Source: Octopus sinensis (lineage: Eukaryota). From it: a DNA stretch of 64,000 nucleotides. Position numbers and translations under genes: made by a program. This document shows positions 2,308 to 64,000 of this stretch, in pieces. The notes under the pieces are model-generated. The model worked only from the letters and a program-made list of their open reading frames with translations, did not search any database and was not told where the DNA came from. Location of the stretch: assembly GCF_006345805.1 (NCBI RefSeq), contig NC_043012.1:42532001-42596000 (forward strand). The letters are read 5' to 3'. Each line of letters opens with the position of its first letter. The stretch's first letter is position 1.

Positions 2308-2342
<35 letters not shown>

Positions 2343-24678: not shown

Positions 24679-25090
<412 letters not shown>

Positions 25091-25091
<1 letters not shown>

Positions 25092-26855: not shown

Positions 26856-26934
26856 GGGAGACTACTGCGCCGGTAGTTGTCCCTTTTGATCAATAGAGGC
26901 GCGTTTATCGTCATTACCTGTAGTCGACATTCTG

Positions 26935-30266: not shown

Positions 30267-30325
<59 letters not shown>

Positions 30326-30494
30326 CATACATTATATATACATATATATATAATATACATATATATATATATATATACATACATACATACATATATATAT
30401 ATTATACATTATATATATCATATATATCATACAAATAGTATATATATATTATATATATATAATATGTGTGTGTATACATACATATATATATATA

Positions 30495-32366: not shown

Positions 32367-32543
32367 TTCAACAACAATTGAGGAATGGCCTTAATAGGCC
32401 ATTCGACCCACTAGAAAGAGCAGCCATTCCTCAATTGTTGTTAAATTTATATATATAGTCTATGACTATTTTCTCTTTCTCACTAGACCGCTGGTGGCGA
32501 AAAAAAATTCTATTGAATTTTTTGCTACCCTATATTGATTAAT
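32367..32543 (-). repeat. Diverged, internally inverted partial copy of the 494-bp array monomer
   Basis: 32458-32543 is a reverse-complement match to the monomer segment AATTAATCAATATAGGGTGGC...AATAGTCATAGAC; 32367-32425 matches CAACAATCAAGGAACGGCCATAATAGGCCATTCACCCACTAGAAATAACAGCC. Confidence 0.82.
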
Positions 32544-32548
32544 TGATG

Positions 32549-32606
<58 letters not shown>

Positions 32607-32829: not shown

Positions 32830-33136
<307 letters not shown>

Positions 33137-34445: not shown

Positions 34446-34486
<41 letters not shown>

Positions 34487-36079: not shown

Positions 36080-36114
36080 ACACACACACACATATATATA
36101 TATATATACATATA

Positions 36115-36766
36115 TAAGTTATAAAATAAGGGGAAAAGAAAAATTTAAATGCCAAAAAAAAATTCTAATGCAAATATGAAATAAAATTGTCAATAACCAT
36201 TATAATTTATGCGTCTCGAAACAAGCCGATAGAAATTTCTAAAACATTCCGTTATTACCGTATTGGTCCCAATTTCAGAGTTAATTCATAAGAATTTTCT
36301 CCTCCTCAGCGATAAATACGTAAGACATAAATGAAATACTTACTCATACTCATGGAAAAAGCAACCACTAAGTCCTGAGCAGACCTAAGTACCCCAAATA
36401 TATCCAAAATAGAAAATCTTCAGCACATCTCGTGACACGTGTGACGCGAACTAGAAACTTTCACAGAGTGAGAGATTCCGGAAGTGAACACTATTAAATT
36501 TACATCTAAGGTAGGATAACATTTTTTCGAAAAAAAAAATTATCAATGGCCAGCATATTAAAAAATACCTTTAAAGTTTAAATTTATAAATAACTTATAA
36601 AATAAGGGCAAAAGAAAAATTCTAATGCCAAATATGCCAAAAATAGACAAAATTGTCAATAACCATTATAATTTATGCGTCTCAAAACAAGCCGATAGAA
36701 ATTTCTAAAAAAATTCCGTTATTACCGTATTGGTCCCAATTTCAGAGTTAATTCATAAGAATTCTA
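36115..36766 (-). repeat. Partial tandem dimer of a ~467-bp hammerhead-containing unit (second retrozyme-like family)
   Basis: 36115-36298 is repeated at about 36590-36766; the equivalent cleavage-site positions 36261 and 36728 are 467 nt apart. Confidence 0.8.
36250..36320 (-). ncRNA. Type I hammerhead ribozyme
   Basis: Stem I UUAUCG/CGGUAA, a 2x2 internal loop and 3 further bp; core CUGAGGA; stem II GGAG/CUCU capped by AAUUC-UUAU-GAAUU; GAAA; stem III UUGG-GA-CCAA; AUA triplet with cleavage after 36261. Confidence 0.8.
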
Positions 36767-36779
36767 TCGGCTTGTTTGT

Positions 36780-40849: not shown

Positions 40850-41170
40850 TAGCTACGTGCCTGGACCGGCCACAATTGGTCTCATTCTGAGATCTCTCTG
40901 CTGTGGAATATTTATGACTATAGAAGTTGACTTGTTACAGGCTTCGTTTATGACCTCACTTTTGTGGATTTTGGGAAGTCCAGAGAAGTTACTGACATTG
41001 CAGTCGAATCTAGTCGAGTAATTCGTCTCCTTTTTTGTTAAATCTTGTTGGAACTGGTGGATAAGGGTAGACAGTTTGGTCATTATCTTCGATTGACTGT
41101 AGTTGTTGAATTTTAGTAGTAAGTATTGGCTTGAAGGAGGGTTAGGTGTTTATGTAGTTTTCTGATGGTA
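40850..41170 (-). mobile_element. Penelope-like element RT N-terminal fragment
   Basis: NFSGLPKIHKS...LRMRPIVAGP matches the PLE RT motif FYGLPKIHK...RPIV. Confidence 0.75.
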
Positions 41171-41990: not shown

Positions 41991-42386
41991 ATGGGATATC
42001 TATCCTTAAATAATTCTACATTTGAAGATGATCCCCCTAGGTGTAATTGTAGAATTAAGTCAAAATGCCCGGCACCTGGTCTGTGTGGGGTAAATAACGT
42101 AATCTATAAATGTACCATAACTACTGAGAATAGCAAATTTTTTTATTTAGTTTGTACTATAAAATTAAAACAAAGAGTTAGCAACCATATCTCCTCGTTT
42201 AAGTTACGTCATAAAGCTGGTTGCACCACACTTTCAAGTAAGATCTGGGAACTCAAAAATAATAATATTAAATATAACCTTAATTGGGAAATAGTTAGAA
42301 GAGCGATGCCTTATAGAAATAACAGGGTAGGTTGCCAACTCTGCTCCATGGAGACATATGAAATTCTAAGGCATAGAAAAAATTAA
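41991..42386 (+). pseudogene. Penelope-type GIY-YIG endonuclease domain
   Basis: CNCR...CP..GLC..NNVIYKC...FYL...LKQRVSNH..SF...TTLSSKIWELK...WEIV...CQLCSME. Confidence 0.82.
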
Positions 42387-44174: not shown

Positions 44175-44208
44175 ATGTATATATATATATATATGTACGT
44201 ATGTATGT

Positions 44209-44239
<31 letters not shown>

Positions 44240-44275
44240 ATATATATATATATTATATATATGTACGTATGTATG

Positions 44276-44313
<38 letters not shown>

Positions 44314-44316
44314 ACG

Positions 44317-44377
<61 letters not shown>

Positions 44378-44483
44378 GTATGTATATATATATATATATA
44401 TGTACGTATGTGTATATAATATATATATATATATTATATATATATATATGTACGTATGTATATATATATATGTACGTATTATG

Positions 44484-44515
<32 letters not shown>

Positions 44516-44617
44516 ATATATATATGTACGTATGTATGTTATATATATATGTACGTATTATAATATATATGTACGTATGTATGTATATATAAATATATAT
44601 ATATGTACGTATGTATG

Positions 44618-44649
<32 letters not shown>

Positions 44650-45921
44650 GTACGTATGTATGTGTATATATATATGTGGTGTGTTGTGTGTGTGTGTGTG
44701 TGGTGTGTGTGTGTGTACGTACGTATGTATATATATATATATATATATTATTGTGAATAGTTCAGGGACAGTACTTCTGACCTACTTTGCTCGGGTTGTA
44801 GTCTGGAAGTCTACGGTGTAAAGTTATAGTCCTTTGTTCTGCCATGTTCTGGAAAGAGTAACGACTTAGGAAGTGACATTTTGGCCCCTACGGTCAGGGA
44901 AAGTTCAAGAAACCACCCTTTAAAATGCGACGCGCTGTGAGCTTGTGGTCAGTCGAGAACAGAGTGAGTTGGCAACAGGTAGTTCTGCTAGAGACAGCAA
45001 AAGGAGACGAAGGAAGCGCATAGGAAGACAGACGCACAGTCATGAGAGATGACAGGCGAGATAGTGACAGGACAGCGTTGAGAACGACAGGCAGACAGTG
45101 AGAGGATGAGGGGTTGAGGAAGACATACACATAGGATTAAACAGCTAATAGAGATGGACTACGGTGTGAGGCATTGGCTGTTGTACGGTATGTGTTAATT
45201 ATTGAGTTGTGTTACTTATGTAAAAGAATTGAACAATGTGAATTGAGTAAAGAACTTGTTGATGTGTTATAAAGAACAATGCTAAAGGCTGGAAAAGAAA
45301 TGAGACAGTAAAGAGACATTGTGAATTAAGGAAAGAAAAAAAGAGTTGTTGAAATGTATTGATACGTGTTACAAATAAAGGAAGGAAAAAGACAAGAAAA
45401 GAACTCTGAACTGTATCGTTAATGTGTACGTTAATTGAACTGTTGTGACTTGAACATTGTATAATGTATTTGTTTGATTCGACGTGTACTGTTTAAATGC
45501 TGTTGTTTCCTTCTTTGATATATCTGATGTTTTCTTTAAATGTATTTGATGTTGTAATGATTGTCATAAACTGTTGTTAAATGTAGCCAATTGCCTTCCG
45601 CCGTGTCTCTGTATCTCTTCTTCCTGTTGTTGTTGTTCTCTCCGGTCCTGCCGGGTTCGCTGCCATCCCCACCGAGTTCTCTCTGTGTGGCGAATTCTCC
45701 GTTCGACTGAGCCTGGTCAATCGTCGTCGCTCGACTTGGTAGGATCCCGGGATCGAGTTTCAGCGACGGCAGGTGGGATTCCGTAACAATATATATATAT
45801 AAATATATATATGTACGTATGTATGCATATATATATATATATGTACGTATGTATGTATATATATAATATATATATGTACGTATGTATATATATATATGTA
45901 CGTATGTATATATATTATATA

Positions 45922-45956
<35 letters not shown>

Positions 45957-46037
45957 ATATATGTACGTATGTATGTATATATATATATATATGTACGTAT
46001 GTATGTATATATATATATATATGTGTGTGTGTGTACG

Positions 46038-46080
<43 letters not shown>

Positions 46081-46180
46081 GTATGTGTAATATATATATA
46101 TACATGTACGTATGTATGTATAAATATATATATATATATTATATATATATCTATATGTAGGTATGTATGTATATATAATA
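44175..46180. repeat. Compound (AT)n/ATGTACGTATGT microsatellite split by a ~1-kb insertion
   Basis: The same TACGTATGTAT-punctuated repeat lies at 44175-44750 and 45789-46180. Confidence 0.92.
44752..45788. mobile_element. Putative solo LTR
   Basis: Non-coding 1037-bp block with TGT...ACA termini, an internal AATAAA near 45374 and sharp boundaries inside a microsatellite; no clean target duplication. Confidence 0.5.
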
Positions 46181-46183
46181 TTA

Positions 46184-46826: not shown

Positions 46827-46843
46827 CACATATTTATTATATG

Positions 46844-48165
<1,322 letters not shown>

Positions 48166-51100
48166 ATTCATAATTAATCAATATAGGGTGGCAAAAAAAA
48201 TTTTGTAGAATTTTTTGCCACCAGCGGGAAAAAATTAAATAGTCATAGACCATTTTTAAGTTCAACATCAACAATCAAGGAACGGCCATAATAGGCCATT
48301 CACCCACTAGAAATAACAGCCAAAGCTTCAACCGCAAATAAAAGTCAACTCCGTAAACAGGAGAAATTTAAAAAAACATTTACCCTGTAATTTCTTATAC
48401 GATGCACCGTTTCATCTGCTGTTTAATGGTAAACTAACCTGATTAAATTAAATCAAGCCAATCTTCCATAGGCCCTCAGATTCTTCAGTAAGAAATAGCC
48501 ACAAGTCGGAACAGATATTTTCACGAGGCATTTCCGACTCTGCCAAGGTAATATCTGACCTAAAATTTTCAAATCATCGCACTCGCGCCAAATTTATCGG
48601 CAGCAAATAAATATAAGCCGTCGATTCCATTACGGAATTAACCAGAAAATTCATAATTAATCAATATAGGGTGGCAAAAAAAAATTTTGTAGAATTTTTT
48701 TGCCACCAGCGGCCTAGTGGGAAAAAATTAAATAGTCATAGACCATTTTTAAGTTCAACATCAACAATCAAGGAACGGCCATAATAGGCCATTCACCCAC
48801 TAGAAATAACAGCCAAAGCTTCAACCGCAAATAAAAGTCAACTCCGTAAACAGGAGAAAATTAAAAAAAATTTACCCTGTAATTTCTTATACGATGCACC
48901 GTTTCATCTGCTGTTTAATGGTAAACTAACCTGATTAAATTAAATCAAGCCAATCTTCCATAGGCCCTCAGATTCTTCAGTAAGAAATAGCCACAAGTCG
49001 GAACAGATATTTTCACGAGGCATTTCCGACTCTGCCAAGGTAATATCTGACCTAAAATTTTCAAATCATCGCACTCGCGCCAAATTTATCGGCAGCAAAT
49101 AAATATAAGCCGTCGATTCCATTACGGAATTAACCAGAAAATTCATAATTAATCAATATAGGGTGGCAAAAAAAATTTTGTAGAATTTTTTTGCCACCAG
49201 CGGCCTAGTGGGGGAAAAAATTAAATAGTCATAGACCATTTTTAAGTTCAACATCAACAATCAAGGAACGGCCATAATAGGCCATTCACCCACTAGAAAT
49301 AACAGCCAAAGCTTCAACCGCAAATAAAAGTCAACTCCGTAAACAGGAGAAAATTTAAAAAACATTTACCCTGTAATTTCTTATACGATGCACCGTTTCA
49401 TCTGCTGTTTAATGGTAAACTAACCTGATTAAATTAAATCAAGCCAATCTTCCATAGGCCCTCAGATTCTTCAGTAAGAAATAGCCACAAGTCGGAACAG
49501 ATATTTTCACGAGGCATTTCCGACTCTGCCAAGGTAATATCTGACCTAAAATTTTCAAATCATCGCACTCGCGCCAAATTTATCGGCAGCAAATAAATAT
49601 AAGCCGTCGATTCCATTACGGAATTAACCAGAAAATTCATAATTAATCAATATAGGGTGCAAAAAAGAAAAAAAAAATTTTGTAGAATTTTTTGCCACCA
49701 GCGGCCTAGTGGGAAAAATTAAATAGTCATAGACCATTTTTAAGTTCAACATCAACAATCAAGGAACGGCCATAATAGGCCATTCACCCACTAGAAATAA
49801 CAGCCAAAGCTTCAACCGCAAATAAAAGTCAACTCCGTAAACAGGAGAAAATTTAAAAAAACATTTACCCTGTAATTTCTTATACGATGCACCGTTTCAT
49901 CTGCTGTTTAATGGTAAACTAACCTGATTAAATTAAATCAAGCCAATCTTCCATAGGCCCTCAGATTCTTCAGTAAGAAATAGCCACAAGTCGGAACAGA
50001 TATTTTCACGAGGCATTTCCGACTCTGCCAAGGTAATATCTGACCTAAAATTTTCAAATCATCGCACTCGCGCCAAATTTATCGGCAGCAAATAAATATA
50101 AGCCGTCGATTCCATTACGGAATTAACCAGAAAATTCATAATTAATCAATATAGGGTGGCAAAAAAATTTTGTAGAATTTTTTGCCACCAGCGGCCTAGT
50201 GGGAAAAAATTAAATAGTCATAGACCATTTTAAGTTCAACATCAACAATCAAGGAACGGCCATAATAGGCCATTCACCCACTAGAAATAACAGCCAAAGC
50301 TTCAACCGCAAATAAAAGTCAACTCCGTAAACAGGAGAGAAAATTTAAAAAACATTTACCCTGTAATTTCTTATACGATGCACCGTTTCATCTGCTGTTT
50401 AATGGTAAACTAACCTGATTAAATTAAATCAAGCCAATCTTCCATAGGCCCTCAGATTCTTCAGTAAGAAATAGCCACAAGTCGGAACAGATATTTTCAC
50501 GAGGCATTTCCGACTCTGCCAAGGTAATATCTGACCTAAAATTTTCAAATCATCGCACTCGCGCCAAATTTATCGGCAGCAAATAAATATAAGCCGTCGA
50601 TTCCATTACGGAATTAACCAGAAAATTCATAATTAATCAATATAGGGTGGCAAAAAAAATTTTGTAGAATTTTTTTGCCACCAGCGGCCTAGTGGGAAAA
50701 AATTAAATAGTCATAGACCATTTTTAAGTTCAACATCAACAATCAAGGAACGGCCATAATAGGCCATTCACCCACTAGAAATAACAGCCAAAGCTTCAAC
50801 CGCAAATAAAAGTCAACTCCGTAAACAGGAGAAAATTTAAAAAACATTTACCCTGTAATTTCTTATACGATGCACCGTTTCATCTGCTGTTTAATGGTAA
50901 ACTAACCTGATTAAATTAAATCAAGCCAATCTTCCATAGGCCCTCAGATTCTTCAGTAAGAAATAGCCACAAGTCGGAACAGATATTTTCACGAGGCATT
51001 CCGACTCTGCCAAGGTAATATCTGACCTAAAATTTTCAAATCATCGCACTCGCGCCAAATTTATCGGCAGCAAATAAATATAAGCCGTCGATTCCATTAC

Positions 51101-54100
51101 GGAATTAACCAGAAAATTCATAATTAATCAATATAGGGTGGCAAAAAAAATTTTGTAGAATTTTTTTGCCACCAGCGGCCTAGTGGGAAAAAATTAAATA
51201 GTCATAGACCATTTTTAAGTTCAACATCAACAATCAAGGAACGGCCATAATAGGCCATTCACCCACTAGAAATAACAGCCAAAGCTTCAACCGCAAATAA
51301 AAGTCAATTCCGTAAACAGGAGAAAATTTAAAAAAACATTTACCCTGTAATTTCTTATACGATGCACCGTTTCATCTGCTGTTTAATGGTAAACTAACCT
51401 GATTAAATTAAATCAAGCCAATCTTCCATAGGCCCTCAGATTCTTCAGTAAGAAATAGCCACAAGTCGGAACAGATATTTTCACGAGGCATTTCCGACTC
51501 TGCCAAGGTAATATCTGACCTAAAATTTTCAAATCATCGCACTCGCGCCAAATTTATCGGCAGCAAATAAATATAAGCCGTCGATTCCATTACGGAATTA
51601 ACCAGAAAATTCATAATTAATCAAATAGGGTGGCAAAAAAAAAAAAAAAATTTGTAGAATTTTTTGCCACCAGCGGCCTAGTGGGAAAAAATTAAATAGT
51701 CATAGACCATTTTTAAGTTCAACATCAACAATCAAGGAACGGCCATAATAGGCCATTCACCCACTAGAAATAACAGCCAAAGCTTCAACCGCAAATAAAA
51801 GTCAACTCCGTAAACAGGAGAAAATTTAAAAAACATTTACCCTGTAATTTCTTATACGATGCACCGTTTCATCTGCTGTTTAATGGTAAACTAACCTGAT
51901 TAAATTAAATCAAGCCAATCTTCCATAGGCCCTCAGATTCTTCAGTAAGAAATAGCCACAAGTCGGAACAGATATTTTCACGAGGCATTTCCGACTCTGC
52001 CAAGGTAATATCTGACCTAAAATTTTCAAATCATCGCACTCGCGCCAAATTTATCGGCAGCAAATAAAATATAGCCGTCGATTCCATTACGGAATTAACC
52101 AGAAATTCATAATTAATCAATATAGGGTGGCAAAAAAGAAAAAAAAAAATTTTGTAGAATTTTTTTGCCACCAGCGGCCTAGTGGGAAAAAATTAAATAG
52201 TCATAGACCATTTTTAAGTTCAACATCAACAATCAAGGAACGGCCATAATAGGCCATTCACCCACTAGAAATAACAGCCAAAGCTTCAACCGCAAATAAA
52301 AGTCAACTCCGTAAACAGGAGAAAATTTAAAAAAATTTACCCTGTAATTTCTTATACGATGCACCGTTTCATCTGCTGTTAATGGTAAACTAACCTGATT
52401 AAATTAAATCAAGCCAATCTTCCATAGGCCCTCAGATTCTTCAGTAAGAAATAGCCACAAGTCGGAACAGATATTTTCACGAGGCATTTCCGACTCTGCC
52501 AAGGTAATATCTGACCTAAAATTTTCAAATCATCGCACTCGCGCCAAATTTATCGGCAGCAAATAAATATAAGCCGTCGATTCCATTACGGAATTAACCA
52601 GAAAATTCATAATTAATCAATATAGGGTGCCAAAAAAAATTTTGTAGAATTTTTTTGCCACCAGCGGCCTAGTGGGAAAAAATTAAATAGTCATAGACCA
52701 TTTTTAAGTTCAACATCAACAATCAAGGAACGGCCATAATAGGCCATTCACCCACTAGAAATAACAGCCAAAGCTTCAACCGCAAATAAAAGTCAACTCC
52801 GTAAACAGGAGAAAATTTAAAAAACATTTACCCTGTAATTCTTATACGATGCACCGTTTCATCTGCTGTTTAATGGTAAACTAACCTGATTAAATTAAAT
52901 CAAGCCAATCTTCCATAGGCCCTCAGATTCTTCAGTAAGAAATAGCCACAAGTCGGAACAGATATTTTCACGAGGCATTTCCGACTCTGCCAAGGTAATA
53001 TCTGACCTAAAATTTTCAAATCATCGCACTCGCGCCAAATTTATCGGCAGCAAATAAATATAAGCCGTCGATTCCATTACGGAATTAACCAGAAAATTCA
53101 TAATTAATCAATATAGGGTGCCAAAAAAAATTTTGTAGAATTTTTTTGCCACCAGCGGGAAAAAATTAAATAGTCATAGACCATTTTTAAGTTCAACATC
53201 AACAATCAAGGAACGGCCATAATAGGCCATTCACCCACTAGAAATAACAGCCAAAGCTTCAACCGCAAATAAAAGTCAACTCCGTAAACAGGAGAAAATT
53301 TAAAAAACATTTACCCTGTAATTTCTTATACGATGCACCGTTTCATGCTGTTTAATGGTAAACTAACCTGATTAAATTAAATCAAGCCAATCTTCCATAG
53401 GCCCTCAGATTCTTCAGTAAGAAATAGCCACAAGTCGGAACAGATATTTTCACGAGGCATTTCCGACTCTGCCAAGGTAATATCTGACCTAAAATTTTCA
53501 AATCATCGCACTCGCGCCAAATTTATCGGCAGCAAATAAATATAAGCCGTCGATTCCATTACGGAATTAACCAGAAAATTCATAATTAATCAATATAGGG
53601 TGGCAAAAAAAGAAAAAAAAAAAAATTTTGTAGAATTTTTTTTGCCACCAGCGGCCTAGTGGGAAAAAATTAAATAGTCATAGACCATTTTTAAGTTCAA
53701 CATCAACAATCAAGGAACGGCCATAATAGGCCATTCACCCACTAGAAATAACAGCCAAAGCTTCAACCGCAAATAAAAGTCAACTCCGTAAACAGGAGAA
53801 AATTTAAAAAACATTTACCCTGTAATTTCTTATACGATGCACCGTTTCATCTGCTGTTTAATGGTAAACTAACCTGATTAAATTAAATCAAGCCAATCTT
53901 CCATAGGCCCTCAGATTCTTCAGTAAGAAATAGCCACAAGTCGGAACAGATATTTTCACGAGGCATTTCCGACTCTGCCAAGGTAATATCTGACCTAAAA
54001 TTTTCAAATCATCGCACTCGCGCCAAATTTATCGGCAGCAAATAAATATAAGCCGTCGATTCCATTACGGAATTAACCAGAAAATTCATAATTAATCAAT

Positions 54101-57100
54101 ATAGGGTGCAAAAAAAATTTTGTAGAATTTTTTGCCACCAGCGGCCTAGTGGGAAAAAATTAAATAGTCATAGACCATTTTTAAGTTCAACATCAACAAT
54201 CAAGGAACGGCCATAATAGGCCATTCACCCACTAGAAATAACAGCCAAAGCTTCAACCGCAAATAAAAGTCAACTCCGTAAACAGGAGAAAATTTAAAAA
54301 ACATTTACCCTGTAATTTCTTATACGATGCACCGTTTCATCTGCTGTTTAATGGTAAACTAACCTGATTAAATTAAATCAAGCCAATCTTCCATAGGCCC
54401 TCAGATTCTTCAGTAAGAAATAGCCACAAGTCGGAACAGATATTTTCACGAGGCATTTCCGACTCTGCCAAGGTAATATCTGACCTAAAATTTTCAAATC
54501 ATCGCACTCGCGCCAAATTTATCGGCAGCAAATAAATATAAGCCGTCGATTCCATTACGGAATTAACCAGAAAATTCATAATTAATCAATATAGGGTGGC
54601 AAAAAAATTTTGTAGAATTTTTTGCCACCAGCGGCCTAGTGGGAAAAAAATTAAATAGTCATAGACCATTTTTAAGTTCAACATCAACAATCAAGGAACG
54701 GCCATAATAGGCCATTCACCCACTAGAAATAACAGCCAAAGCTTCAACCGCAAATAAAAGTCAACTCCGTAAACCAGGAGAAAATTTAAAAAACATTTAC
54801 CCTGTAATTTCTTATACGATGCACCGTTTCATCTGCTGTTTAATGGTAAACTAACCTGATTAAATTAAATCAAGCCAATCTTCCATAGGCCCTCAGATTC
54901 TTCAGTAAGAAATAGCCACAAGTCGGAACAGATATTTTCACGAGGCATTTCCGACTCTGCCAAGGTAATATCTGACCTAAAATTTTCAAATCATCGCACT
55001 CGCGCCAAATTTATCGGCAGCAAATAAATATAAGCCGTCGATTCCATTACGGAATTAACCAGAAAATTCATAATTAATCAATATAGGGTGGCAAAAAAAA
55101 TTTTGTAGAATAGAATTTTTTTGCCACCAGCGGCCTAGTGGGAAAAAATTAAATAGTCATAGACCATTTTTAAGTTCAACATCAACAATCAAGGAACGGC
55201 CATAATAGGCCATTCACCCACTAGAAATAACAGCCAAAGCTTCAACCGCAAATAAAAGTCAACTCCGTAAACAGGAGAAAATTTAAAAAACATTTACCCT
55301 GTAATTTCTTATACGATGCACCGTTTCATCTGCTGTTAATGGTAAACTAACCTGATTAAATTAAATCAAGCCAATCTTCCATAGGCCCTCAGATTCTTCA
55401 GTAAGAAATAGCCACAAGTCGGAACAGATATTTTCACGAGGCATTTCCGACTCTGCCAAGGTAATATCTGACCTAAAATTTTCAAATCATCGCACTCGCG
55501 CCAAATTTATCGGCAGCAAATAAATATAAGCCGTCGATTCCATTACGGAATTAACCAGAAAATTCATAATTAATCAATATAGGGTGGAAAAAAAAAAAAA
55601 AAAAAAATTTTGTAGAATTTTTTTGCCACCAGCGGCCTAGTGGGAAAAAATTAAATAGTCATAGACCATTTTTAAGTTCAACATCAACAATCAAGGAACG
55701 GCCATAATAGGCCATTCACCCACTAGAAATAACAGCCAAAGCTTCAACCGCAAATAAAAGTCAACTCCGTAAACAGAGAGAAAATTTAAAAAACATTTAC
55801 CCTGTAATTTCTTATACGATGCACCGTTTCATCTGCTGTTTAATGGTAAACTAACCTGATTAAATTAAATCAAGCCAATCTTCCATAGGCCCTCAGATTC
55901 TTCAGTAAGAAATAGCCACAAGTCGGAACAGATATTTTCACGAGGCATTTCCGACTCTGCCAAGGTAATATCTGACCTAAAATTTTCAAATCATCGCACT
56001 CGCGCCAAATTTATCGGCAGCAAATAAATATAAGCCGTCGATTCCATTACGGAATTAACCAGAAAATTCATAATTAATCAATATAGGGTGGCAAAAAAAA
56101 TTTTGTAGAATTTTTTGCCACCAGCGGCCTAGTGGGAAAAAATTAAATAGTCATAGACCATTTTTAAGTTCAACATCAACAATCAAGGAACGGCCATAAT
56201 AGGCCATTCACCCACTAGAAATAACAGCCAAAGCTTCAACCGCAAATAAAAGTCAACTCCGTAAACAGGAGAAAATTTAAAAAACATTTACCCTGTAATT
56301 TCTTATACGATGCACCGTTTCATCTGCTGTTTAATGGTAAACTAACCTGATTAAATTAAATCAAGCCAATCTTCCATAGGCCCTCAGATTCTTCAGTAAG
56401 AAATAGCCACAAGTCGGAACAGATATTTTCACGAGGCATTCCGACTCTGCCAAGGTAATATCTGACCTAAAATTTTCAAATCATCGCACTCGCGCCAAAT
56501 TTATCGGCAGCAAATAAATATAAGCCGTCGATTCCATTACGGAATTAACCAGAAAATTCATAATTAATCAATATAGGGTGGCAAAAAAATTTTGTAGAAT
56601 TTTTTTGCCACCAGCGGCCTAGTGGGAAAAAATTAAATAGTCATAGACCATTTTTAAGTTCAACATCAACAATCAAGGAACGGCCATAATAGGCCATTCA
56701 CCCACTAGAAATAACAGCCAAAGCTTCAACCGCAAATAAAAGTCAACTCCGTAAACAGGAGAAAATTTAAAAAAACATTTACCCTGTAATTTCTTATACG
56801 ATGCACCGTTTCATCTGCTGTTTAATGGTAACTAACCTGATTAAATTAAATCAAGCCAATCTTCCATAGGCCCTCAGATTCTTCAGTAAGAAATAGCCAC
56901 AAGTCGGAACAGATATTTTCACGAGGCATTTCCGACTCTGCCAAGGTAATATCTGACCTAAAATTTTCAAATCATCGCACTCGCGCCAAATTTATCGGCA
57001 GCAAATAAATATAAGCCGTCGATTCCATTACGGAATAACAACAGAAAAATTCATAATTAATCAATATAGGGTGGAAAAAAAATTTGTAGAATTTTTTTGC

Positions 57101-60100
57101 CACCAGCGGCCTAGTGGGAAAAAATTAAATAGTCATAGACCATTTTTAAGTTCAACATCAACAATCAAGGAACGGCCATAATAGGCCATTCACCCACTAG
57201 AAATAACAGCCAAAGCTTCAACCGCAAATAAAAGTCAACTCCGTAAACAGGAGAAAAATTAAAAAAACATTTACCCTGTAATTTCTTATACGATGCACCG
57301 TTTCATCTGCTTTTAATGGTAAACTAACCTGATTAAATTAAATCAAGCCAATCTTCCATAGGCCCTCAGATTCTTCAGTAAGAAATAGCCACAAGTCGGA
57401 ACAGATATTTTCACGAGGCATTTCCGACTCTGCCAAGGTAATATCTGACCTAAAATTTTCAAATCATCGCACTCGCGCCAAATTTATCGGCAGCAAATAA
57501 ATATAAGCCGTCGATTCCATTACGGAATTAACCAGAAAATTCATAATTAATCAATATAGGGTGGCAAAAAAAGAAAAAAAAAAAATTTTGTAGAATTTTT
57601 TTGCCACCAGCGGCCTAGTGGGAAAAAATTAAATAGTCATAGACCATTTTTAAGTTCAACATCAACAATCAAGGAACGGCCATAATAGGCCATTCACCCA
57701 CTAGAAATAACAGCCAAAGCTTCAACCGCAAATAAAAGTCAACTCCGTAAACAGGAGAAAATTTAAAAAACATTTACCCTGTAAATTCTTATACGATGCA
57801 CCGTTTCATCTGCTGTTTAATGGTAAACTAACCTGATTAAATTAAATCAAGCCAATCTTCCATAGGCCCTCAGATTCTTCAGTAAGAAATAGCCACAAGT
57901 CGGAACAGATATTTTCACGAGGCATTTCCGACTCTGCCAAGGTAATATCTGACCTAAAATTTTCAAATCATCGCACTCGCGCCAAATTTATCGGCAGCAA
58001 ATAAATATAAGCCGTCGATTCCATTACGGAATTAACCAGAAAATTCATAATTAATCAATATAGGGTGGCAAAAAAAATTTTGTAGAATTTTTTGCCACCA
58101 GCGGCCTAGTGGGAAAAAATTAAATAGTCATAGACCATTTTTAAGTTCAACATCAACAATCAAGGAACGGCCATAATAGGCCATTCACCCACTAGAAATA
58201 ACAGCCAAAGCTTCAACCGCAAATAAAAGTCAACTCCGTAAACAGGAGAAAATTTAAAAAAACATTTACCCTGTAATTTCTTATACGATGCACCGTTTCA
58301 TCTGCTGTTTAATGGTAAACTAACCTGATTAAATTAAATCAAGCCAATCTTCCATAGGCCCTCAGATTCTTCAGTAAGAAATAGCCACAAGTCGGAACAG
58401 ATATTTTCACGAGGCATTTCCGACTCTGCCAAGGTAATATCTGACCTAAAATTTTCAAATCATCGCACTCGCGCCAAATTTATCGGCAGCAAATAAATAT
58501 AGCCGTCGATTCCATTACGGAATTAACCAGAAAATTCATAATTAATCAATATAGGGTGGCAAAAAAAGAAAAAAAAAAATTTTTGTAGAATTTTTTGCCA
58601 CCAGCGGCCTAGTGGGAAAAATTAAATAGTCATAGACCATTTTTAAGTTCAACATCAACAATCAAGGAACGGCCATAATAGGCCATTCACCCACTAGAAA
58701 TAACAGCCAAAGCTTCAACCGCAAATAAAGTCAATTCCGTAAACAGGAGAAAATTAAAAAACATTTACCCTGTAATTTCTTATACGATGCACCGTTTCAT
58801 CTGCTGTTTAATGGTAAACTAACCTGATTAAATTAAATCAAGCCAATCTTCCATAGGCCCTCAGATTCTTCAGTAAGAAATAGCCACAAGTCGGAACAGA
58901 TATTTTCACGAGGCATTTCCGACTCTGCCAAGGTAATATCTGACCTAAAATTTTCAAATCATCGCACTCGCGCCAAATTTATCGGCAGCAAATAAATATA
59001 AGCCGTCGATTCCATTACGGAATTAACCAGAAAATTCATAATTAATCAATATAGGGTGGCAAAAAAAAAAAAAAAAAATTTTGTAGAATTTTTTTGCCAC
59101 CAGCGGCCTAGTGGGAAAAAATTAAATAGTCATAGACCATTTTTAAGTTCAACATCAACAATCAAGGAACGGCCATAATAGGCCATTCACCCACTAGAAA
59201 TAACAGCCAAAGCTTCAACCGCAAATAAAAGTCAACTCCGTAAACAGGAGAAAATTTAAAAAACATTTACCCTGTAATTTCTTATACGATGCACCGTTTC
59301 ATCTGCTGTTTAATGGTAAACTAACCTGATTAAATTAAATCAAGCCAATCTTCCATAGGCCCTCAGATTCTTCAGTAAGAAATAGCCACAAGTCGGAACA
59401 GATATTTTCACGAGGCATTTCCGACTCTGCCAAGGTAATATCTGACCTAAAATTTTCAAATCATCGCACTCGCGCCAAATTTATCGGCAGCAAATAAATA
59501 TAAGCCGTCGATTCCATTACGGAATTAACCAGAAAATTCATAATTAATCAATATAGGGTGGCAAAAAAAATTTTGTAGAATTTTTTGCCACCAGCGGCCT
59601 AGTGGGAAAAAATTAAATAGTCATAGACCATTTTTAAGTTCAACATCAACAATCAAGGAACGGCCATAATAGGCCATTCACCCACTAGAAATAACAGCCA
59701 AAGCTTCAACCGCAAATAAAAGTCAATTCCGTAAACAGGAGGAGAAAATTTAAAAAACATTTACCCTGTAATTTCTTATACGATGCACCGTTTCATCTGC
59801 TGTTTAATGGTAAACTAACCTGATTAAATTAAATCAAGCCAATCTTCCATAGGCCCTCAGATTCTTCAGTAAGAAATAGCCACAAGTCGGAACAGATATT
59901 TTCACGAGGCATTCCGACTCTGCCAAGGTAATATCTGACCTAAAATTTTCAAATCATCGCACTCGCGCCAAATTTATCGGCAGCAAATAAATATAAGCCG
60001 TCGATTCCATTACGGAATTAACCAGAAAATTCATAATTAATCAATATAGGTGGCAAAAAAAAAAAAAAAAAATTTTGTAGAATTTTTTTGCCACCAGCGG

Positions 60101-63100
60101 CCTAGTGGGAAAAAATTAAATAGTCATAGACCATTTTTAAGTTCAACATCAACAATCAAGGAACGGCCATAATAGGCCATTCACCCACTAGAAAAAACAG
60201 CCAAAGCTTCAACCGCAAATAAAAGTCAACTCCGTAAACAGGAGAAATTTTAAAAAACATTTACCCTGTAATTTCTTATACGATGCACCGTTTCATCTGC
60301 TGTTTAATGGTAAACTAACCTGATTAAATTAAATCAAGCCAATCTTCCATAGGCCTCAGATTCTTCAGTAAGAAATAGCCACAAGTCGGAACAGATATTT
60401 TCACGAGGCATTTCCGACTCTGCCAAGTAATATCTGACCAAATTTTCAAATCATCGCACTCGCGCCAAATTTATCGGCAGCAAATAAATATAAGCCGTCG
60501 ATTCCATTACGGAATTAACCAGAAAATTCATAATTAATCAATATAGGGTGGCAAAAAGAAAAAAAAAAAATTTTGTAGAATTTTTTTGCCACCAGCGGCC
60601 TAGTGGGAAAAAATTAAATAGTCATAGACCATTTTTAAGTTCAACATCAACAATCAAGGAACGGCCATAATAGGCCATTCACCCACTAGAAATAACAGCC
60701 AAAGCTTCAACCGCAAATAAAAGTCAACTCCGTAAACAGGAGAAAATTTAAAAACATTTACCCTGTAATTTCTTATACGATGCACCGTTTCATCTGCTGT
60801 TTAATGGTAAACTAACCTGATTAAATTAAATCAAGCCAATCTTCCATAGGCCCTCAGATTCTTCAGTAAGAAATAGCCACAAGTCGGAACAGATATTTCA
60901 CGAGGCATTTCCGACTCTGCCAAGGTAATATCTGACCTAAAATTTTCAAATCATCGCACTCGCGCCAAATTTATCGGCAGCAAATAAATATAAGCCGTCG
61001 ATTCCATTACGGAATTAACCAGAAAATTCATAATTAATCAATATAGGGTGGCAAAAAAAAATTTTGTAGAATTTTTTTGCCACCAGCGGCCTAGTGGGAA
61101 AAAATTAAATAGTCATAGACCATTTTTAAGTTCAACATCAACAATCAAGGAACGGCCATAATAGGCCATTCACCCACTAGAAATAACAGCCAAAGCTTCA
61201 ACCGCAAATAAAAGTCAACTCCGTAAACAGGAGAAAATTTAAAAAACATTTACCCTGTAATTTCTTATACGATGCACCGTTTCATCTGCTGTTTAATGGT
61301 AAACTAACCTGATTAAATAAATCAAGCCAATCTTCCATAGGCCCTCAGATTCTTCAGTAAGAAATAGCCACAAGTCGGAACAGATATTTTCACGAGGCAT
61401 TTCCGACTCTGCCAAGGTAATATCTGACCTAAAATTTTCAAATCATCGCACTCGCGCCAAATTTATCGGCAGCAAATAAATATAAGCCGTCGATTCCATT
61501 ACGGAATTAACCAGAAAATTCATAATTAATCAATATAGGGTGGCAAAAAAAATTTTGTAGAATTTTTTTGCCACCAGCGGCCTAGTGGGAAAAAATTAAA
61601 TAGTCATAGACATTTTTAAGTTCAACATCAACAATCAAGGAACGGCCATAATAGGCCATTCACCCACTAGAAATAACAGCCAAAGCTTCAACCGCAATAT
61701 AAAGTCAATTCCGTAAACAGGAGAAAATTAAAAAAACATTTACCCTGTAATTTCTTATACGATGCACCGTTTCATCTGCTGTTTAATGGTAAAGTAACCT
61801 GATTAAATTAAATCAAGCCAATCTTCCATAGGCCCTCAGATTCTTCAATAAGAAATAGCCACAAGTCGGAACAGATATTTTCACGAGGCATTTCCGACTC
61901 TGCCAAGGTAATATCTGACCTAAAATTTTCAAATCATCGCACTCGCGCCAAATTTATCGGCAGCAAATAAATATAAGCCGTCGATTCCATTACGGAATTA
62001 ACCAGAAAATTCATAATTAATCAATATAGGGTGGCAAAAAAAAAAAAAAAAAAATTTTGAATTTTTTTGCCACCAGCGGCCTAGTGGGAAAAAATTAAAT
62101 AGTCATAGACCATTTTTAAGTTCAACATCAACAATCAAGGAACGGCCATAATAGGCCATTCACCCACTAGAAATAACAGCCAAAGCTTCAACCGCAAATA
62201 AAAGTCAACTCCGTAAACAGGAGAAAATTTAAAAAAACATTTACCCTGTAATTTCTTATACGATGCACCGTTTCATCTGCTGTTTAATGGTAAACTAACC
62301 TGATTAAATTAAATCAAGCCAATCTTCCATAGGCCCTCAGATTCTTCAGTAAGAAATAGCCACAAGTCGGAACAGATATTTTCACGAGGCATTTCCGACT
62401 CTGCCAAGGTAATATCTGACCTAAAATTTTCAAATCATCGCACTCGCGCCAATTTATCGGCAGCAAATAAATATAAGCCGTCGATTCCATTACGGAATTA
62501 ACCAGAAAATTCATAATTAATCAATATAGGGTGGCAAAAAAAATTTGTAGAATTTTTTGCCACCAGCGGCCTAGTGGGAAAAAATTAAATAGTCATAGAC
62601 CATTTTAAGTTCAACATCAACAATCAAGGAACGGCCATAATAGGCCATTCACCCACTAGAAATAACAGCCAAAGCTTCAACCGCAAATAAAAGTCAACTC
62701 CGTAAACAGGAGAAAATTTAAAAAACATTTACCCTGTAATTTCTTATACGATGCACCGTTTCATCTGGTTTAATGGTAAACTAACCTGATTAAATTAAAT
62801 CAAGCCAATCTCCATAGGCCCTCAGATTCTTCAGTAAGAAATAGCCACAAGTCGGAACAGATATTTCACGAGGCATTTCCGACTCTGCCAAGGTAATATC
62901 TGACCTAAATTTTCAAATCATCGCACTCGCGCCAAATTTATCGGCAGCAATAAATATAAGCCGTCGATTCCATTACGGAATTAACCAGAAAATTCATAAT
63001 TAATCAATATAGGGTGGCAAAAAAAATTTTGTAGAATTTTTTGCCACCAGGGCTAGTGGGAAAAAATTAAATAGTCATAGACCATTTTTAAGTTCAACAT

Positions 63101-64000
63101 CAACAATCAAGGAACGGCCATAATAGGCCATTCACCCACTAGAAATAACAGCCAAAGCTTCAACCGCAAATAAAAGTCAATTCCGTAAACAGGAGAAAAT
63201 TTTAAAAAACATTTACCCTGTAATTTCTTATACGATGCACCGTTTCATCTGCTGTTTAATGGTAAACTAACTGATTAAATTAAATCAAGCCAATCTTCCA
63301 TAGGCCTCAGATTCTTCAATAAGAAATAGCCACAAGTCGGAACAGATATTTTCACGAGGCATTTCCGACTCTGCCAAGGTAATATCTGACCTAAAATTTT
63401 CAAATCATCGCACTCGCGCCAAATTTATCGGCAGCAAATAAATATAAGCCGTCGATTCCATTACGGAATTAACCAGAAAATTCATAATTAATCAATATAG
63501 GGTGGCAAAAAAAAAAAAAAAAAAATTTTGTTGAATTTTTTTGCCACAGCGGCCTAGTGGGAAAAAATTAAATAGTCATAGACCATTTTTAAGTTCAACA
63601 TCAACAATCAAGGAACGGCCATAATAGGCCATTCACCCACTAGAAATAACAGCCAAAGCTTCAACCGCAAATAAAAGTCAACTCCGTAAACAGGAGAAAA
63701 ATTAAAAAACATTTACCCTGTAATTTCTTATACGATGCACCGTTTCATCTGCTGTTTAATGGTAAACTAACCTGATTAAATTAAATCAAGCCAATCTTCC
63801 ATAGGCCCTCAGATTCTTCAGTAAGAAATAGCCACAAGTCGGAACAGATATTTTCACGAGGCATTTCCGACTCTGCCAAGGTAATATCTGACCTAAAATT
63901 TTCAAATCATCGCACTCGCGCCAAATTTATCGGCAGCAAATAAATATAAGCCGTCGATTCCATTACGGAATTAACCACAAAATTCATAATTAATCAATAT
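48166..64000 (-). repeat. Tandem array of ~494-bp monomers (32 complete units, continuing past the window end), nearly all carrying a complete type I hammerhead; retrozyme-like
   Basis: The anchor TCAATATAGG recurs at 48178, 48661, 49153 ... 63492 and 63994 (32 intervals, mean about 494 bp). Units are near-identical, differing mainly in homopolymer length. Confidence 0.96.
48390..48496 (-). ncRNA. Type I hammerhead ribozyme (first of 32 tandem copies)
   Basis: Stem I AUUUCUUA/UAAGAAAU (8 bp); core CUGAAGA (48488-48482); stem II AUCUG/CAGAU enclosing three small hairpins; GAAA; stem III C-G, G-C, G.U with a UGCA loop; GUA triplet with predicted cleavage between 48398 and 48397. Confidence 0.9.

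What the first reader, a model, noticed from the sequence alone, without database searches (positions are those of the whole stretch)
48166..64000. A 16-kb satellite that is an array of 32 hammerhead ribozyme units (retrozyme-like, predicted ~494-nt RNA or circRNA source)
Seen: the minus strand of each monomer reads AUUUCUUA-CUGAAGA-AUCUG-[insert]-CAGAU-GAAA-CGG-UGCA-UCG-UA-UAAGAAAU. That gives all conserved core nucleotides, three correctly ordered stems and a GUA site (first copy 48390-48496). Established: tandem type I hammerheads spaced by a few hundred nt define metazoan non-LTR retrozymes and ribozyme satellites (newt satellite 2, schistosome Sm-alpha), which self-cleave to monomers and can circularise. 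Inference: read-through transcription would be cut into ~494-nt units. A homogeneous array of at least 32 units in a cephalopod could be an undescribed family, either integrated as a multimer or later amplified as satellite DNA.
Basis: partly seen in the sequence, partly recalled or inferred. Interest (0 to 1): 0.93.

Follow-up and report, generated by a model that had tools for sequence, protein, structure and literature searches.

The report
Octopus hammerhead-ribozyme tandem repeat (retrozyme-type)
A 16-kb stretch of octopus DNA is a tandem array of about 32 copies of a 492-base unit, each with a well-formed self-cutting hammerhead RNA motif on one strand; this fits a known class of animal repeats (non-LTR retrozymes, or ribozyme satellites), so it is a new example and not a new kind of element.

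Summary
Window 48166-64000 is one tandem array (period ~491, 32 copies, 97% alike) that runs off the window end. The motif is not chance. No strict hit occurred in 20,000 monomer shuffles or among 719 permuted decoy cores on the real sequence.

The 58-nt "insert" is a long hairpin that extends helix II. It has five G-U pairs, so it forms only in the ribozyme-sense RNA (z -4.5 against -1.1 for the other strand). Helix III is weak with a palindromic UGCA loop. Two copies co-fold into a textbook double hammerhead (ddG -14 kcal/mol).

The host is Octopus vulgaris or a close relative. The array ends in a 1.3-kb (AT)n, and an older inverted fragment ends at almost the same monomer position, also in (TA)n. 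This suggests retrotransposition of the Penelope-like type.

Against: Rfam hammerhead models do not match even at E<=10. The 10.1-11.1 pair is A-U, not G-C. No per-copy constraint is seen. No homologues or RNA data could be reached.

Verdict: new member of a known kind; moderate interest.

The parts
48166..64000 (-). Tandem array of at least 32 units (484-504 bp, consensus 492 bp, about 36% GC) that runs off the window end. The ribozyme-sense strand is the minus strand.
   Evidence: TRF; unit phasing and consensus; composition; no ORF longer than 39 aa.
48390..48496 (-). First hammerhead copy (107 nt). Helix I is 8 bp. The core is CUGAAGA. Helix II is 5 bp plus a 58-nt hairpin extension, followed by GAAA. 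Helix III is A-U, C-G, G-C, G-U with a UGCA loop. The predicted cut is between A17 (48398) and U1.1 (48397).
   Evidence: Sequence, exact match, folds; z -4.54 on this strand against -1.08 on the other.
50374..50865 (-). Representative full unit, cut site to cut site (492 nt). It carries the consensus base at every one of the 32 alignment columns where two or more units share a variant. This is the predicted linear and circular RNA monomer.
   Evidence: Alignment of 31 units. The circular MFE of the 492-nt consensus is -140 kcal/mol, z -5.2.
63223..63329 (-). Hammerhead copy with a C3->U core mutation (predicted inactive), plus 1-nt deletions in the helix II extension.
61750..61856 (-). Hammerhead copy with a C3->U core mutation (predicted inactive).
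53321..53427 (-). Hammerhead copy with a 2-nt deletion in the 3' strand of helix II (CAGAU -> CAU).
46830..48167 (.). 1.3-kb (AT)n microsatellite that abuts the ribozyme-sense 3' end of the array. The array stops at monomer position about 241 (...AUUAAUUAUGAAU|AUAUAU). It is the candidate integration target or 3' tail.
   Evidence: TRF; junction sequence.
32369..32553 (+). Older, diverged (81-87%) solo fragment of the same repeat family, in the opposite orientation to the array. It is an inverted piece (monomer positions 129->76) joined to a forward piece (about 112->244). (AT)n lies on both sides, and its 3' end is at monomer position about 244. It has no hammerhead part.
   Evidence: blastn against the consensus; junctions; pair comparison.
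36110..36777 (-). Second, unrelated ribozyme-bearing repeat: a 1.4-copy tandem of a 467-nt unit. Copy A is 36763-36586 and copy B is 36296-36110 (88% alike). A 16-nt inverted piece sits at its 5' end and (TA)n at its 3' end.
   Evidence: blastn self-comparison; sequence; junctions.
36255..36315 (-). Compact type I hammerhead-like motif of the second family: UUAUCG-CUGAGGA-GGAG-[18 nt]-CUCU-GAA-AUUG-GGAC-CAAU-A|CGGUAA.
   Evidence: Descriptor hit. Only 1 of 719 decoy cores gives any hit in the same 48 kb. Not matched by Rfam.

Best explanation
The array is a non-coding, AT-rich tandem repeat of Octopus vulgaris or a very close relative. It belongs to the class called non-LTR retrozymes, or hammerhead satellites (newt satellite 2, cave-cricket pDo500, schistosome Sm-alpha, mussel and coral retrozymes). 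Each 492-nt unit encodes one type I hammerhead ribozyme on the minus strand.

Proposed mechanism:
1. Read-through transcription of the minus strand gives a multimeric RNA.
2. A single motif tends to misfold, because helix III is weak (about -1 kcal/mol) and core bases C3-G5 pair elsewhere. Two motifs of one transcript pair through their near-palindromic helix III segment (ACGGUGCAUCGU) into a double hammerhead. This leaves every core nucleotide free.
3. Each site is then cut after GUA.
4. This releases 492-nt monomers with 5'-OH and 2',3'-cyclic phosphate ends. The 8-bp helix I holds these ends together, ready for ligation into a highly base-paired circular RNA.
5. Such RNAs would be copied by a Penelope-like element reverse transcriptase and integrated at (TA)n microsatellites, primed on an AU-rich patch about 241-244 nt downstream of the cut site.
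6. After integration the array was reshaped by DNA-level unequal exchange.

Shown here: the array, the motif and its significance, the strand-specific folds, the predicted double-hammerhead fold, the junctions, and the host.
Inferred: transcription, cleavage, circularisation, reverse transcription, and the identity of the mobilising enzyme.
For: Motif:
- Complete core and three helices in 29 of 32 units, on one strand only.
- Far beyond chance in shuffles and in the decoy-core control on real sequence.

Folding:
- The 58-nt 'insert' does not disrupt the motif. It folds as a coaxial hairpin extension of helix II, including a 14-bp helix with five G-U pairs, so it forms only in ribozyme-sense RNA.
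- The 107-nt motif has an MFE of -30.7 kcal/mol, z -4.54, with 0 of 200 shuffles as stable. The opposite strand gives -16.1 kcal/mol, z -1.08.
- The whole unit folded as a circle gives -140 kcal/mol, z -5.2, against -95 kcal/mol, z -3.6 for the antisense.
- Helix III alone is -1.2 kcal/mol, but as a two-copy duplex it is -19.5 kcal/mol.
- Co-folding two copies gives the classical double hammerhead, with the core unpaired and ddG -14.3 kcal/mol.
- This matches the published description of metazoan type I hammerheads: a short helix III, a palindromic loop, and activity as dimers in tandem repeats (PMC4209133; PMC7229834).

Class features:
- GC below 45%, units of a few hundred bp, large multimers, no ORF. 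These agree with PMC7229834 and bioRxiv 10.64898/2026.07.22.740005.
- pDo500 units are 463-505 bp (PMC2837043).

Mobility:
- The array and an older inverted fragment end within 3-4 nt of the same monomer position, both at (TA)n.
- The second ribozyme repeat in the window also ends in (TA)n.
- Penelope-like elements show (TA)n insertion bias and tandem/inverted insertion structures (PMC8557442).
- Recently active insertions of Penelope-like elements are annotated in O. vulgaris (PMC13282606).

Host: a neighbouring gene is 99% identical to an O. vulgaris protein.
Against: - No Rfam hammerhead model matches. This holds at gathering score on the whole window, at E<=10 on 1.5 kb, and at E<=10 on 136 nt.
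- The 10.1-11.1 pair is A-U. G-C at this position is among the most conserved pairs of the ribozyme (PMC3088659; PMC4209133).
- There is no canonical loop 2, and helix I has no internal loop. The usual helix I-helix II tertiary contact therefore cannot be recognised.
- The single-copy MFE is an inactive conformer.
- Substitutions are no rarer at essential ribozyme positions than elsewhere in the unit (0.0033 against 0.0032 per site per copy, p=0.81). Nothing shows selection on individual copies.
- No homologue from another locus or species carrying the hammerhead could be obtained, so there is no covariation test.
- There is no RNA evidence of any kind.
- U8-U20 tracts in the ribozyme-sense RNA would terminate RNA polymerase III, so transcription would need polymerase II, and no promoter was identified (inference from established knowledge of Pol III termination).
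- Monomer subtypes are irregularly interspersed, so the array is not simply one rolling-circle cDNA.
Confidence: 0.7

Rival explanations
1. Relic: the repeat descends from a ribozyme-bearing retroelement but is now only a DNA satellite, amplified and homogenised by unequal crossing-over. It is not transcribed, or its hammerhead is too impaired to cut.
For: - There is no excess conservation of ribozyme positions among copies.
- Three copies carry inactivating changes, two of them the same C3->U in non-adjacent units.
- Monomer subtypes (T8 against T17-20 tract, with or without an internal C) are irregularly interspersed. This indicates DNA-level exchange.
- The A10.1-U11.1 pair and the lack of a recognisable tertiary contact suggest weakened catalysis.
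- Rfam models do not match.
Against: - 29 of 32 motifs are intact, and the array is only about 0.3% diverged in substitutions. It is therefore too young for decay to be informative either way.
- Strand-specific G-U-rich structure and the clean double-hammerhead co-fold are retained.
- Mussel retrozyme hammerheads also lack most of the nucleotides of the canonical tertiary contact, yet they self-cleave and give abundant circular RNA (PMC7229834).
Confidence: 0.2
2. Chance: an ordinary satellite whose monomer happens to contain a hammerhead-like string with no ribozyme ancestry.
For: - All 32 copies are one amplified sequence, so the observation counts once.
- The first-stage scan looked at many windows, which raises the number of trials.
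- Rfam gives no support.
Against: - None of 20,000 monomer shuffles and none of 719 decoy cores reach the observed quality.
- The palindromic helix III, the coaxial helix II extension and the strand asymmetry are extra features. The search descriptor did not require them, yet they fit hammerhead biology.
- A second, unrelated hammerhead-like repeat lies 12 kb away.
- 235 Rfam hammerhead hits are reported in another cephalopod genome (PMC6962438).
Confidence: 0.03
3. Part of an autonomous Penelope-like element: the units are tandem pseudo-LTRs of such an element, not an independent non-autonomous repeat.
For: - Penelope-like elements carry type I hammerheads in their flanking repeats and form tandem structures (PMC4209133; PMC8557442).
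- Retrozymes are proposed to derive from these pseudo-LTRs (abstract of bioRxiv 10.64898/2026.07.22.740005).
Against: - There is no ORF above 39 aa anywhere in 16 kb of array.
- 32 uninterrupted units are not the pLTR-ORF-pLTR layout.
- The hammerhead has full-size helices I (8 bp) and III, unlike the minimal motifs described for metazoan Penelope-like elements.
Confidence: 0.05

Closest known systems
Metazoan non-LTR retrozymes (Cervera & de la Pena 2020, PMC7229834; mussel, coral, axolotl)
   Same: - One type I hammerhead per unit, on one strand only.
- Head-to-tail repeats of a few hundred bp, from dimers to large multimers.
- GC below 45%, non-coding, no LTR features.
- Predicted highly self-paired monomer RNA.
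- The host genome also has Penelope-like elements.
- Like the mussel ribozymes, it lacks the archetypal loop 1-loop 2 nucleotides.
   Different: - The unit (492 nt) is longer than the 150-450 bp given in that paper, though within the 51-972 bp of the 2026 preprint.
- Helix II carries a 58-nt hairpin extension instead of a small loop 2.
- The 10.1-11.1 pair is A-U.
- No expression or circular RNA data exist for the octopus repeat.
- I found no paper describing hammerhead repeats or retrozymes in an octopus.
pDo500 satellite DNA of Dolichopoda cave crickets (Rojas et al. 2000; PMC2837043)
   Same: - A satellite with almost the same unit length (463-505 bp) and one hammerhead per unit.
- Processing of multimeric transcripts to monomers.
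- A proposed double-hammerhead mode.
- Non-G-C variants at 10.1-11.1 occur there too.
   Different: - The cricket ribozyme is a compact 49-nt motif and is conserved across 12 species, with compensatory changes.
- For the octopus repeat no cross-species data could be obtained.
- There is no sequence similarity.
Newt/salamander satellite 2 hammerhead (Epstein & Gall 1987; summarised in PMC7229834)
   Same: - Tandem satellite with a type I hammerhead.
- Weak helix III capped by a palindromic tetraloop.
- Poor cleavage as a single motif and efficient cleavage as a dimer. This is the behaviour the octopus folds predict.
   Different: - Newt helix III has 1 bp. The octopus has 3 bp beyond A15.1-U16.1.
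- The newt motif has the conserved loop 1-loop 2 contacts and a small loop 2.
- The newt unit is about 330 bp.
Minimal hammerheads in the pseudo-LTRs of Penelope-like elements (PMC4209133)
   Same: - Type I motif with a palindromic helix III region and dimeric action.
- Association with tandem and inverted insertion structures.
- For some clades, association with (TA)n targets.
   Different: - Those motifs are minimal (helix I 4-5 bp, little or no helix III) and lie beside a reverse transcriptase-endonuclease ORF.
- The octopus units have full helices and no ORF.

Membership tests
Hammerhead ribozyme, type I | Conserved core: C3 U4 G5 A6 N7 G8 A9, G12 A13 A14, the A15.1-U16.1 pair, and H17 (not G) at the cut site | tested here: met
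   CUGAAGA ... GAA ... A-U ... GUA| is present in 29 of 32 units. Two units have C3->U.
Hammerhead ribozyme, type I | Three helices in the right order around the core, with helix I open-ended | tested here: met
   Helix I is 8 bp, helix II is 5 bp plus the extension, and helix III is 4 bp including 15.1-16.1. The constrained fold is -29.2 kcal/mol against an MFE of -30.7.
Hammerhead ribozyme, type I | G10.1-C11.1 pair at the base of helix II (highly conserved, not absolute) | tested here: not met
   The pair is A10.1-U11.1. Its conservation is stated in PMC3088659 and PMC4209133. Variants are known in pDo500, and a U-U mismatch occurs in the axolotl.
Hammerhead ribozyme, type I | Tertiary contact between helix I (loop or bulge) and loop 2 | tested here: inconclusive
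   There is no canonical loop 2 and no bulge in helix I. An internal loop 5 bp from the core (AGGGCCUA/UUAAACAG) could substitute. A 4-bp pairing of its GGCC with the GGCU that lies 5' of helix I is possible but not significant (read from the sequence).
Hammerhead ribozyme, type I | Match to the curated covariance models (Rfam hammerhead families) | tested here: not met
   No hammerhead family is reported at gathering score or at E<=10 on 1.5 kb or 136 nt.
Hammerhead ribozyme, type I | Site-specific self-cleavage in Mg2+ | not testable with these tools
   Needs in vitro transcription of monomer and dimer constructs.
Non-LTR retrozyme (metazoan) | Type I hammerhead in at least two consecutive units of a tandem repeat, with motif MFE below -5 kcal/mol (operational definition in bioRxiv 10.64898/2026.07.22.740005) | tested here: met
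   TRF array; runs of consecutive intact motifs; MFE -30.7 kcal/mol; definition read.
Non-LTR retrozyme (metazoan) | Unit of a few hundred bp, low GC (below 45%), non-coding, no LTR | tested here: met
   492 bp and about 36% GC. The longest ORF is 39 aa. Published ranges are 150-450 bp and 51-972 bp.
Non-LTR retrozyme (metazoan) | Expressed as self-cleaved linear and circular RNA, highly self-paired | not testable with these tools
   Only the predicted structure could be tested: circular MFE -140 kcal/mol, z -5.2, stronger than the antisense. No RNA data were reachable.
Non-LTR retrozyme (metazoan) | Co-existence with Penelope-like elements in the host genome, and sequence relation to their pseudo-LTRs | tested here: inconclusive
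   Co-existence is met from the literature: 31 recently active Penelope-like families in O. vulgaris (PMC13282606). Relation to a pseudo-LTR was not tested because no octopus genome collection was available. Possible Penelope-like fragments in the window remain unresolved.
Viroid-like / delta-like circular RNA replicon | Ribozymes in both polarities, and RNA-only existence | tested here: not met
   There is no hammerhead on the plus strand and no other Rfam ribozyme. The sequence is chromosomal DNA lying beside host genes and transposons.
Penelope-like element (autonomous) | Reverse transcriptase plus GIY-YIG endonuclease ORF between hammerhead-bearing flanking repeats | tested here: not met
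   No ORF longer than 39 aa in the array.

The most novel reading that the evidence does not exclude
The octopus repeat may represent a hammerhead architecture that current models miss: a 68-nt helix II arm in place of loop 2, A10.1-U11.1, and obligate double-hammerhead action. It may be the source of an abundant 492-nt circular RNA in cephalopod tissues. Two independent insertions share a 3' end at (TA)n. These could be direct genomic footprints of how retrozyme circles are integrated: a (TA)n-targeting Penelope-like enzyme priming by microhomology on an internal AU-rich patch of a circular template, not on the ribozyme-cut 3' end.
Probability: 0.25. Interest if true: 0.55.

Novelty: new member of a known kind. 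Interest (0 to 1): 0.36.

Why it matters
- It adds cephalopods to the animals with a concrete, well-formed hammerhead tandem repeat. A detailed 2026 repeat annotation of O. vulgaris mentions neither ribozymes nor retrozymes.
- It shows that covariance-model screens (Rfam) can miss such motifs when helix II is extended and the 10.1-11.1 pair varies.
- It offers natural controls in one locus: intact units, C3->U units and a helix II deletion.
- If transcribed, the array would give a 492-nt circular RNA. This is of interest in an animal known for unusual RNA biology.
- The shared (TA)n junctions give a testable handle on how retrozymes integrate, and on their proposed dependence on Penelope-like elements.

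Tried and rejected
- Rfam: searched at gathering score on the whole window, and at E<=10 on 1.5 kb, on 136 nt, and on the second motif. No hammerhead or other ribozyme family was found. The only hits were weak miRNA, sRNA and CRISPR-repeat look-alikes of the A/U hairpin, which I reject as chance.
- Relatives elsewhere: the full gapped hammerhead pattern found nothing in metagenome contigs. The 19-mer of the 3' half found nothing in viral contigs. The same 19-mer gave 7 metagenome hits, all bacterial-looking with no hammerhead context, roughly the number I would expect by chance for a collection that size. No eukaryotic genome or transcriptome collection was available.
- Exact look-ups of three short monomer ORFs (34, 39 and 32 aa) in public assemblies, as a route to other loci or RNA-seq contigs: nothing on record.
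- Per-copy purifying selection on ribozyme positions: no signal. The array is too homogeneous for the test to have power.
- tRNA/SINE origin (as in Sm-alpha): ARAGORN finds nothing. A box A-like string, CGGCCTAGTGG, lies on the plus strand, but a T5 run follows it and it is not kept in the diverged fragment. Rejected (read by eye).
- Penelope-like remnants near the array: the ORF at 41991-42386 looks GIY-YIG-like by eye and has 2,959 homologues. Pfam gives only one sub-threshold GIY-YIG hit in a homologue and no reverse transcriptase domain. Its only named relative is a probably mis-annotated O. sinensis protein. A short 'GLPKIHK...RPIV' fragment at 40853-41083 is suggestive from memory only. 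Left unresolved.
- Similarity between the two ribozyme repeats in the window: none.


Full report
OBSERVATION

Tandem Repeats Finder reports a single array at 48166-64000: period 491, 32.0 copies, 97% matches, 2% indels. It reaches the last base of the window, so 32 is a minimum. I phased the units on the predicted cut site. That gives 31 complete units of 484-504 nt and a 492-nt consensus. Base composition is about 36% GC. The skew is constant, making the minus strand G- and T-rich. No ORF exceeds 39 aa.

The first is at 48390-48496, as stated. All 32 units carry a recognisable copy. 29 units pass a structural descriptor. Three are damaged:
- C3->U at 63223-63329.
- C3->U at 61750-61856.
- A 2-nt loss in the 3' strand of helix II at 53321-53427.

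No hammerhead motif lies on the plus strand.

IS IT MORE THAN CHANCE?

I wrote a descriptor requiring CUGANGA, helix II of at least 4 bp with up to 120 nt enclosed, GAAA, helix III of at least 3 bp closed by A-U, then H, and helix I of at least 5 bp.
- It gave no hit in 5.8 Mb of dinucleotide-preserving shuffles of the non-array part of the window.
- In 20,000 shuffles of the monomer it gave 3 loose hits and no hit of the observed quality (8/5/4 bp).
- Shuffles destroy natural hairpins, so I also ran the real sequence with 719 decoy cores (all permutations of the core letters). Two decoys gave a loose hit in the monomer and none a strict one. Only one decoy hit anything in the 48-kb background.

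The motif is therefore significant. It still counts as one independent observation, because the array is one sequence amplified.

ANATOMY OF THE RIBOZYME

- Helix I is a perfect 8 bp (AUUUCUUA/UAAGAAAU).
- The core is CUGAAGA ... GAA.
- The 15.1-16.1 pair is A-U.
- The cut is predicted after GUA, between window positions 48398 and 48397 in the first copy.

The 58-nt 'insert' does not disrupt the motif. It folds as an extension of the 5-bp helix II (AUCUG/CAGAU): an internal loop, a 4-bp helix and a 14-bp helix. Five of those 14 pairs are G-U, which become A-C mismatches on the other strand. Accordingly:
- The 107-nt motif folds to -30.7 kcal/mol with z -4.54, and none of 200 shuffles is as stable.
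- The complementary strand gives -16.1 kcal/mol with z -1.08.
- The whole unit folded as a circle gives -140 kcal/mol (z -5.2) in the ribozyme sense, and -95 kcal/mol (z -3.6) in the antisense.

This strand asymmetry is what RNA-level structure on the minus strand predicts.

DOUBLE HAMMERHEAD

Helix III (A-U, C-G, G-C, G-U, loop UGCA) is worth only -1.2 kcal/mol on its own. The single-copy MFE is in fact a misfold in which C3-G5 pair with the helix III strand. The catalytic fold is 1.5 kcal/mol less stable.

The segment ACGGUGCAUCGU is near-palindromic. Two copies form a 12-bp duplex of -19.5 kcal/mol. Co-folding two 107-nt motifs gives the classical double hammerhead, 14.3 kcal/mol better than two separate monomers. 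It has:
- an intermolecular helix III;
- helices I and II formed;
- every core nucleotide and A17 unpaired.

This is the behaviour described for metazoan type I hammerheads in tandem repeats: a short helix III, a palindromic loop, and activity as dimers (PMC4209133; PMC7229834). I therefore predict cleavage mainly in multimeric transcripts and protection of the finished monomer.

WHAT SPEAKS AGAINST

No Rfam hammerhead model matches, at gathering score or at E<=10 even when only 136 nt are searched.
- Likely reasons (my inference, not tested) are the helix II extension, A at N7, and above all A10.1-U11.1. G-C at that position is among the most conserved pairs. Non-G-C variants are documented in natural satellites.
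- No canonical loop 1-loop 2 contact can be seen. The mussel retrozyme ribozymes also lack most of those nucleotides, yet they cleave and give abundant circles.
- Within the array, substitutions are as frequent at essential ribozyme positions as elsewhere (0.0033 against 0.0032 per site per copy; Fisher p 0.81). The array is so homogeneous that this test has little power. It shows only that individual copies are not under visible constraint.

HOST AND CONTEXT

A 319-aa ORF at 6833-7792 (minus strand) is 99% identical to 'chitin deacetylase 7-like [Octopus vulgaris]' and 62% identical to an Argonauta protein. The cephalopod attribution is therefore correct.

The rest of the window is transposon-rich: two LINE-type reverse transcriptases and an LTR-element pol. 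It is also dense in (TA)n microsatellites.

EVIDENCE FOR MOBILITY

Read in the ribozyme sense, the array ends at monomer position about 241 (...AUUAAUUAUGAAU) directly against a 1.3-kb (AT)n at 46830-48167.

The only other piece of this family in the window is at 32369-32553.
- It is 81-87% identical and lies in the opposite orientation.
- It has (AT)n on both sides.
- It consists of an inverted 5' piece joined to a forward piece.
- It ends at monomer position about 244, again directly against (TA)n.

So two insertions of different age and orientation share nearly the same 3' end. That end is not the ribozyme cut site. This argues for reverse transcription primed on an internal AU-rich patch, for example of a circular template, by a (TA)n target end. 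This is inference.

Penelope-like elements are reported to prefer (TA)n and to make tandem/inverted insertion structures (PMC8557442). Recently active insertions of them are annotated in O. vulgaris (PMC13282606). They are the proposed mobilisers and ancestors of animal retrozymes.

An alternative I cannot exclude is an old duplication and inversion of the array edge.

GROWTH OF THE ARRAY

The units fall into subtypes. A U/T tract in a 13-bp A/U-rich hairpin is T8 in 19 units and T17-20 in 12 units, 6 of which carry an internal C. The subtypes are irregularly interspersed. Other variants are shared by non-adjacent units. A single rolling-circle cDNA would give identical units. The present array must therefore have been reshaped by unequal exchange or conversion at the DNA level, or assembled in several steps.

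A SECOND RIBOZYME REPEAT

The same descriptor finds one more motif, on the minus strand at 36255-36315: UUAUCG-CUGAGGA-GGAG-[18 nt]-CUCU-GAA-AUUG-GGAC-CAAU-A|CGGUAA.
- It lies in a 1.4-copy tandem of an unrelated 467-nt unit at 36110-36777. The repeated part is 88% identical.
- It has a 16-nt inverted piece at its 5' end and (TA)n at its 3' end.
- Its unit folds better in the ribozyme sense (z -3.1 against -2.5).
- The decoy test gives about 0.1-0.3% for a chance hit in this background.
- Rfam does not match it either.

It looks like a dead insertion of a second retrozyme-type family.

COMPARISON WITH WHAT IS KNOWN

Ribozyme satellites have been known since 1987: newt satellite 2, schistosome Sm-alpha, and cricket pDo500 with 463-505-bp units. 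In 2020 they were reinterpreted as non-LTR retrozymes. These are 150-450-bp AT-rich tandem units forming arrays up to 62-mers, found in cnidarians, molluscs (mussel, 350-390 bp), arthropods and amphibians, and expressed as circular RNAs. A 2026 preprint gives 51-972-bp units and up to 300 copies. Its operational definition is met by this locus.

The giant squid genome paper lists 235 Rfam hammerhead hits. I found no paper describing a hammerhead repeat or retrozyme in an octopus.

This is therefore a new member of a known kind, with an unusual helix II arm.

VERDICT

Activity, transcription and circularisation remain untested. Interest is moderate (0.36), not 0.93.

Noticed in passing
window 36110-36777 (minus strand); motif at 36255-36315: A second, unrelated hammerhead-like motif in a 1.4-copy tandem of a 467-nt unit. 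It has a 16-nt inverted piece at the 5' end and (TA)n at the 3' end. A decoy-core control puts a chance hit at about 0.1-0.3%. Rfam does not match it.
   Followed up: yes
window 32369-32553 (plus strand): A diverged (81-87%) rearranged fragment of the array's monomer, in opposite orientation and flanked by (AT)n on both sides. It ends at nearly the same monomer position as the array does.
   Followed up: yes
window 48166-64000, hairpin GGUGGCAAAAAAA...UUUUUUUGCCACC in each unit: The U/T tract of this hairpin is T8 in 19 units and T17-20 in 12 units, 6 of which carry an internal C. The subtypes are irregularly interspersed. This could reflect unequal exchange, polymerase slippage or assembly error in long homopolymers.
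   Followed up: partly
window 6833-7792 (minus strand): A single-exon 319-aa ORF that is 99% identical to 'chitin deacetylase 7-like [Octopus vulgaris]' and 62% identical to an Argonauta hians protein. It identifies the host. Pfam gives no domain hit for it.
   Followed up: partly
window 41991-42386 (plus strand) and 40853-41083 (minus strand): A 131-aa ORF that looks GIY-YIG-like by eye has 2,959 homologues, and the domain sits at the C-terminus in the longer ones listed. Pfam support is only one sub-threshold GIY-YIG hit. Nearby is a short 'GLPKIHK...RPIV' fragment reminiscent of Penelope-like reverse transcriptases. These may be Penelope-like remnants about 6 kb from the array, but this is unresolved.
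   Followed up: partly
window 307-1881 (-), 21849-25315 (-), 26100-29737 (+), 36748-37530 (-): Two LINE-type reverse transcriptase ORFs (Pfam RVT_1), one LTR-retrotransposon gag-pol with integrase, and an ORF that by eye resembles a LINE endonuclease (no Pfam support). That last ORF stops where the second ribozyme repeat begins.
   Followed up: partly
window 2187-2937, 24679-25091, 30239-30494, 32835-33136, 34436-35475, 44178-44675, 45789-46181, 46830-48167: A very high density of long microsatellites, mostly (TA)n with some (GATA)n and (CATA)n. Exact (TA)n runs of 12 nt or more cover about 5% of the first 48 kb.
   Followed up: no
window 38363-38569: A purine-rich (GA-rich) tandem repeat with nested periods of 35, 66 and 98 nt. 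Its function or origin was not examined.
   Followed up: no
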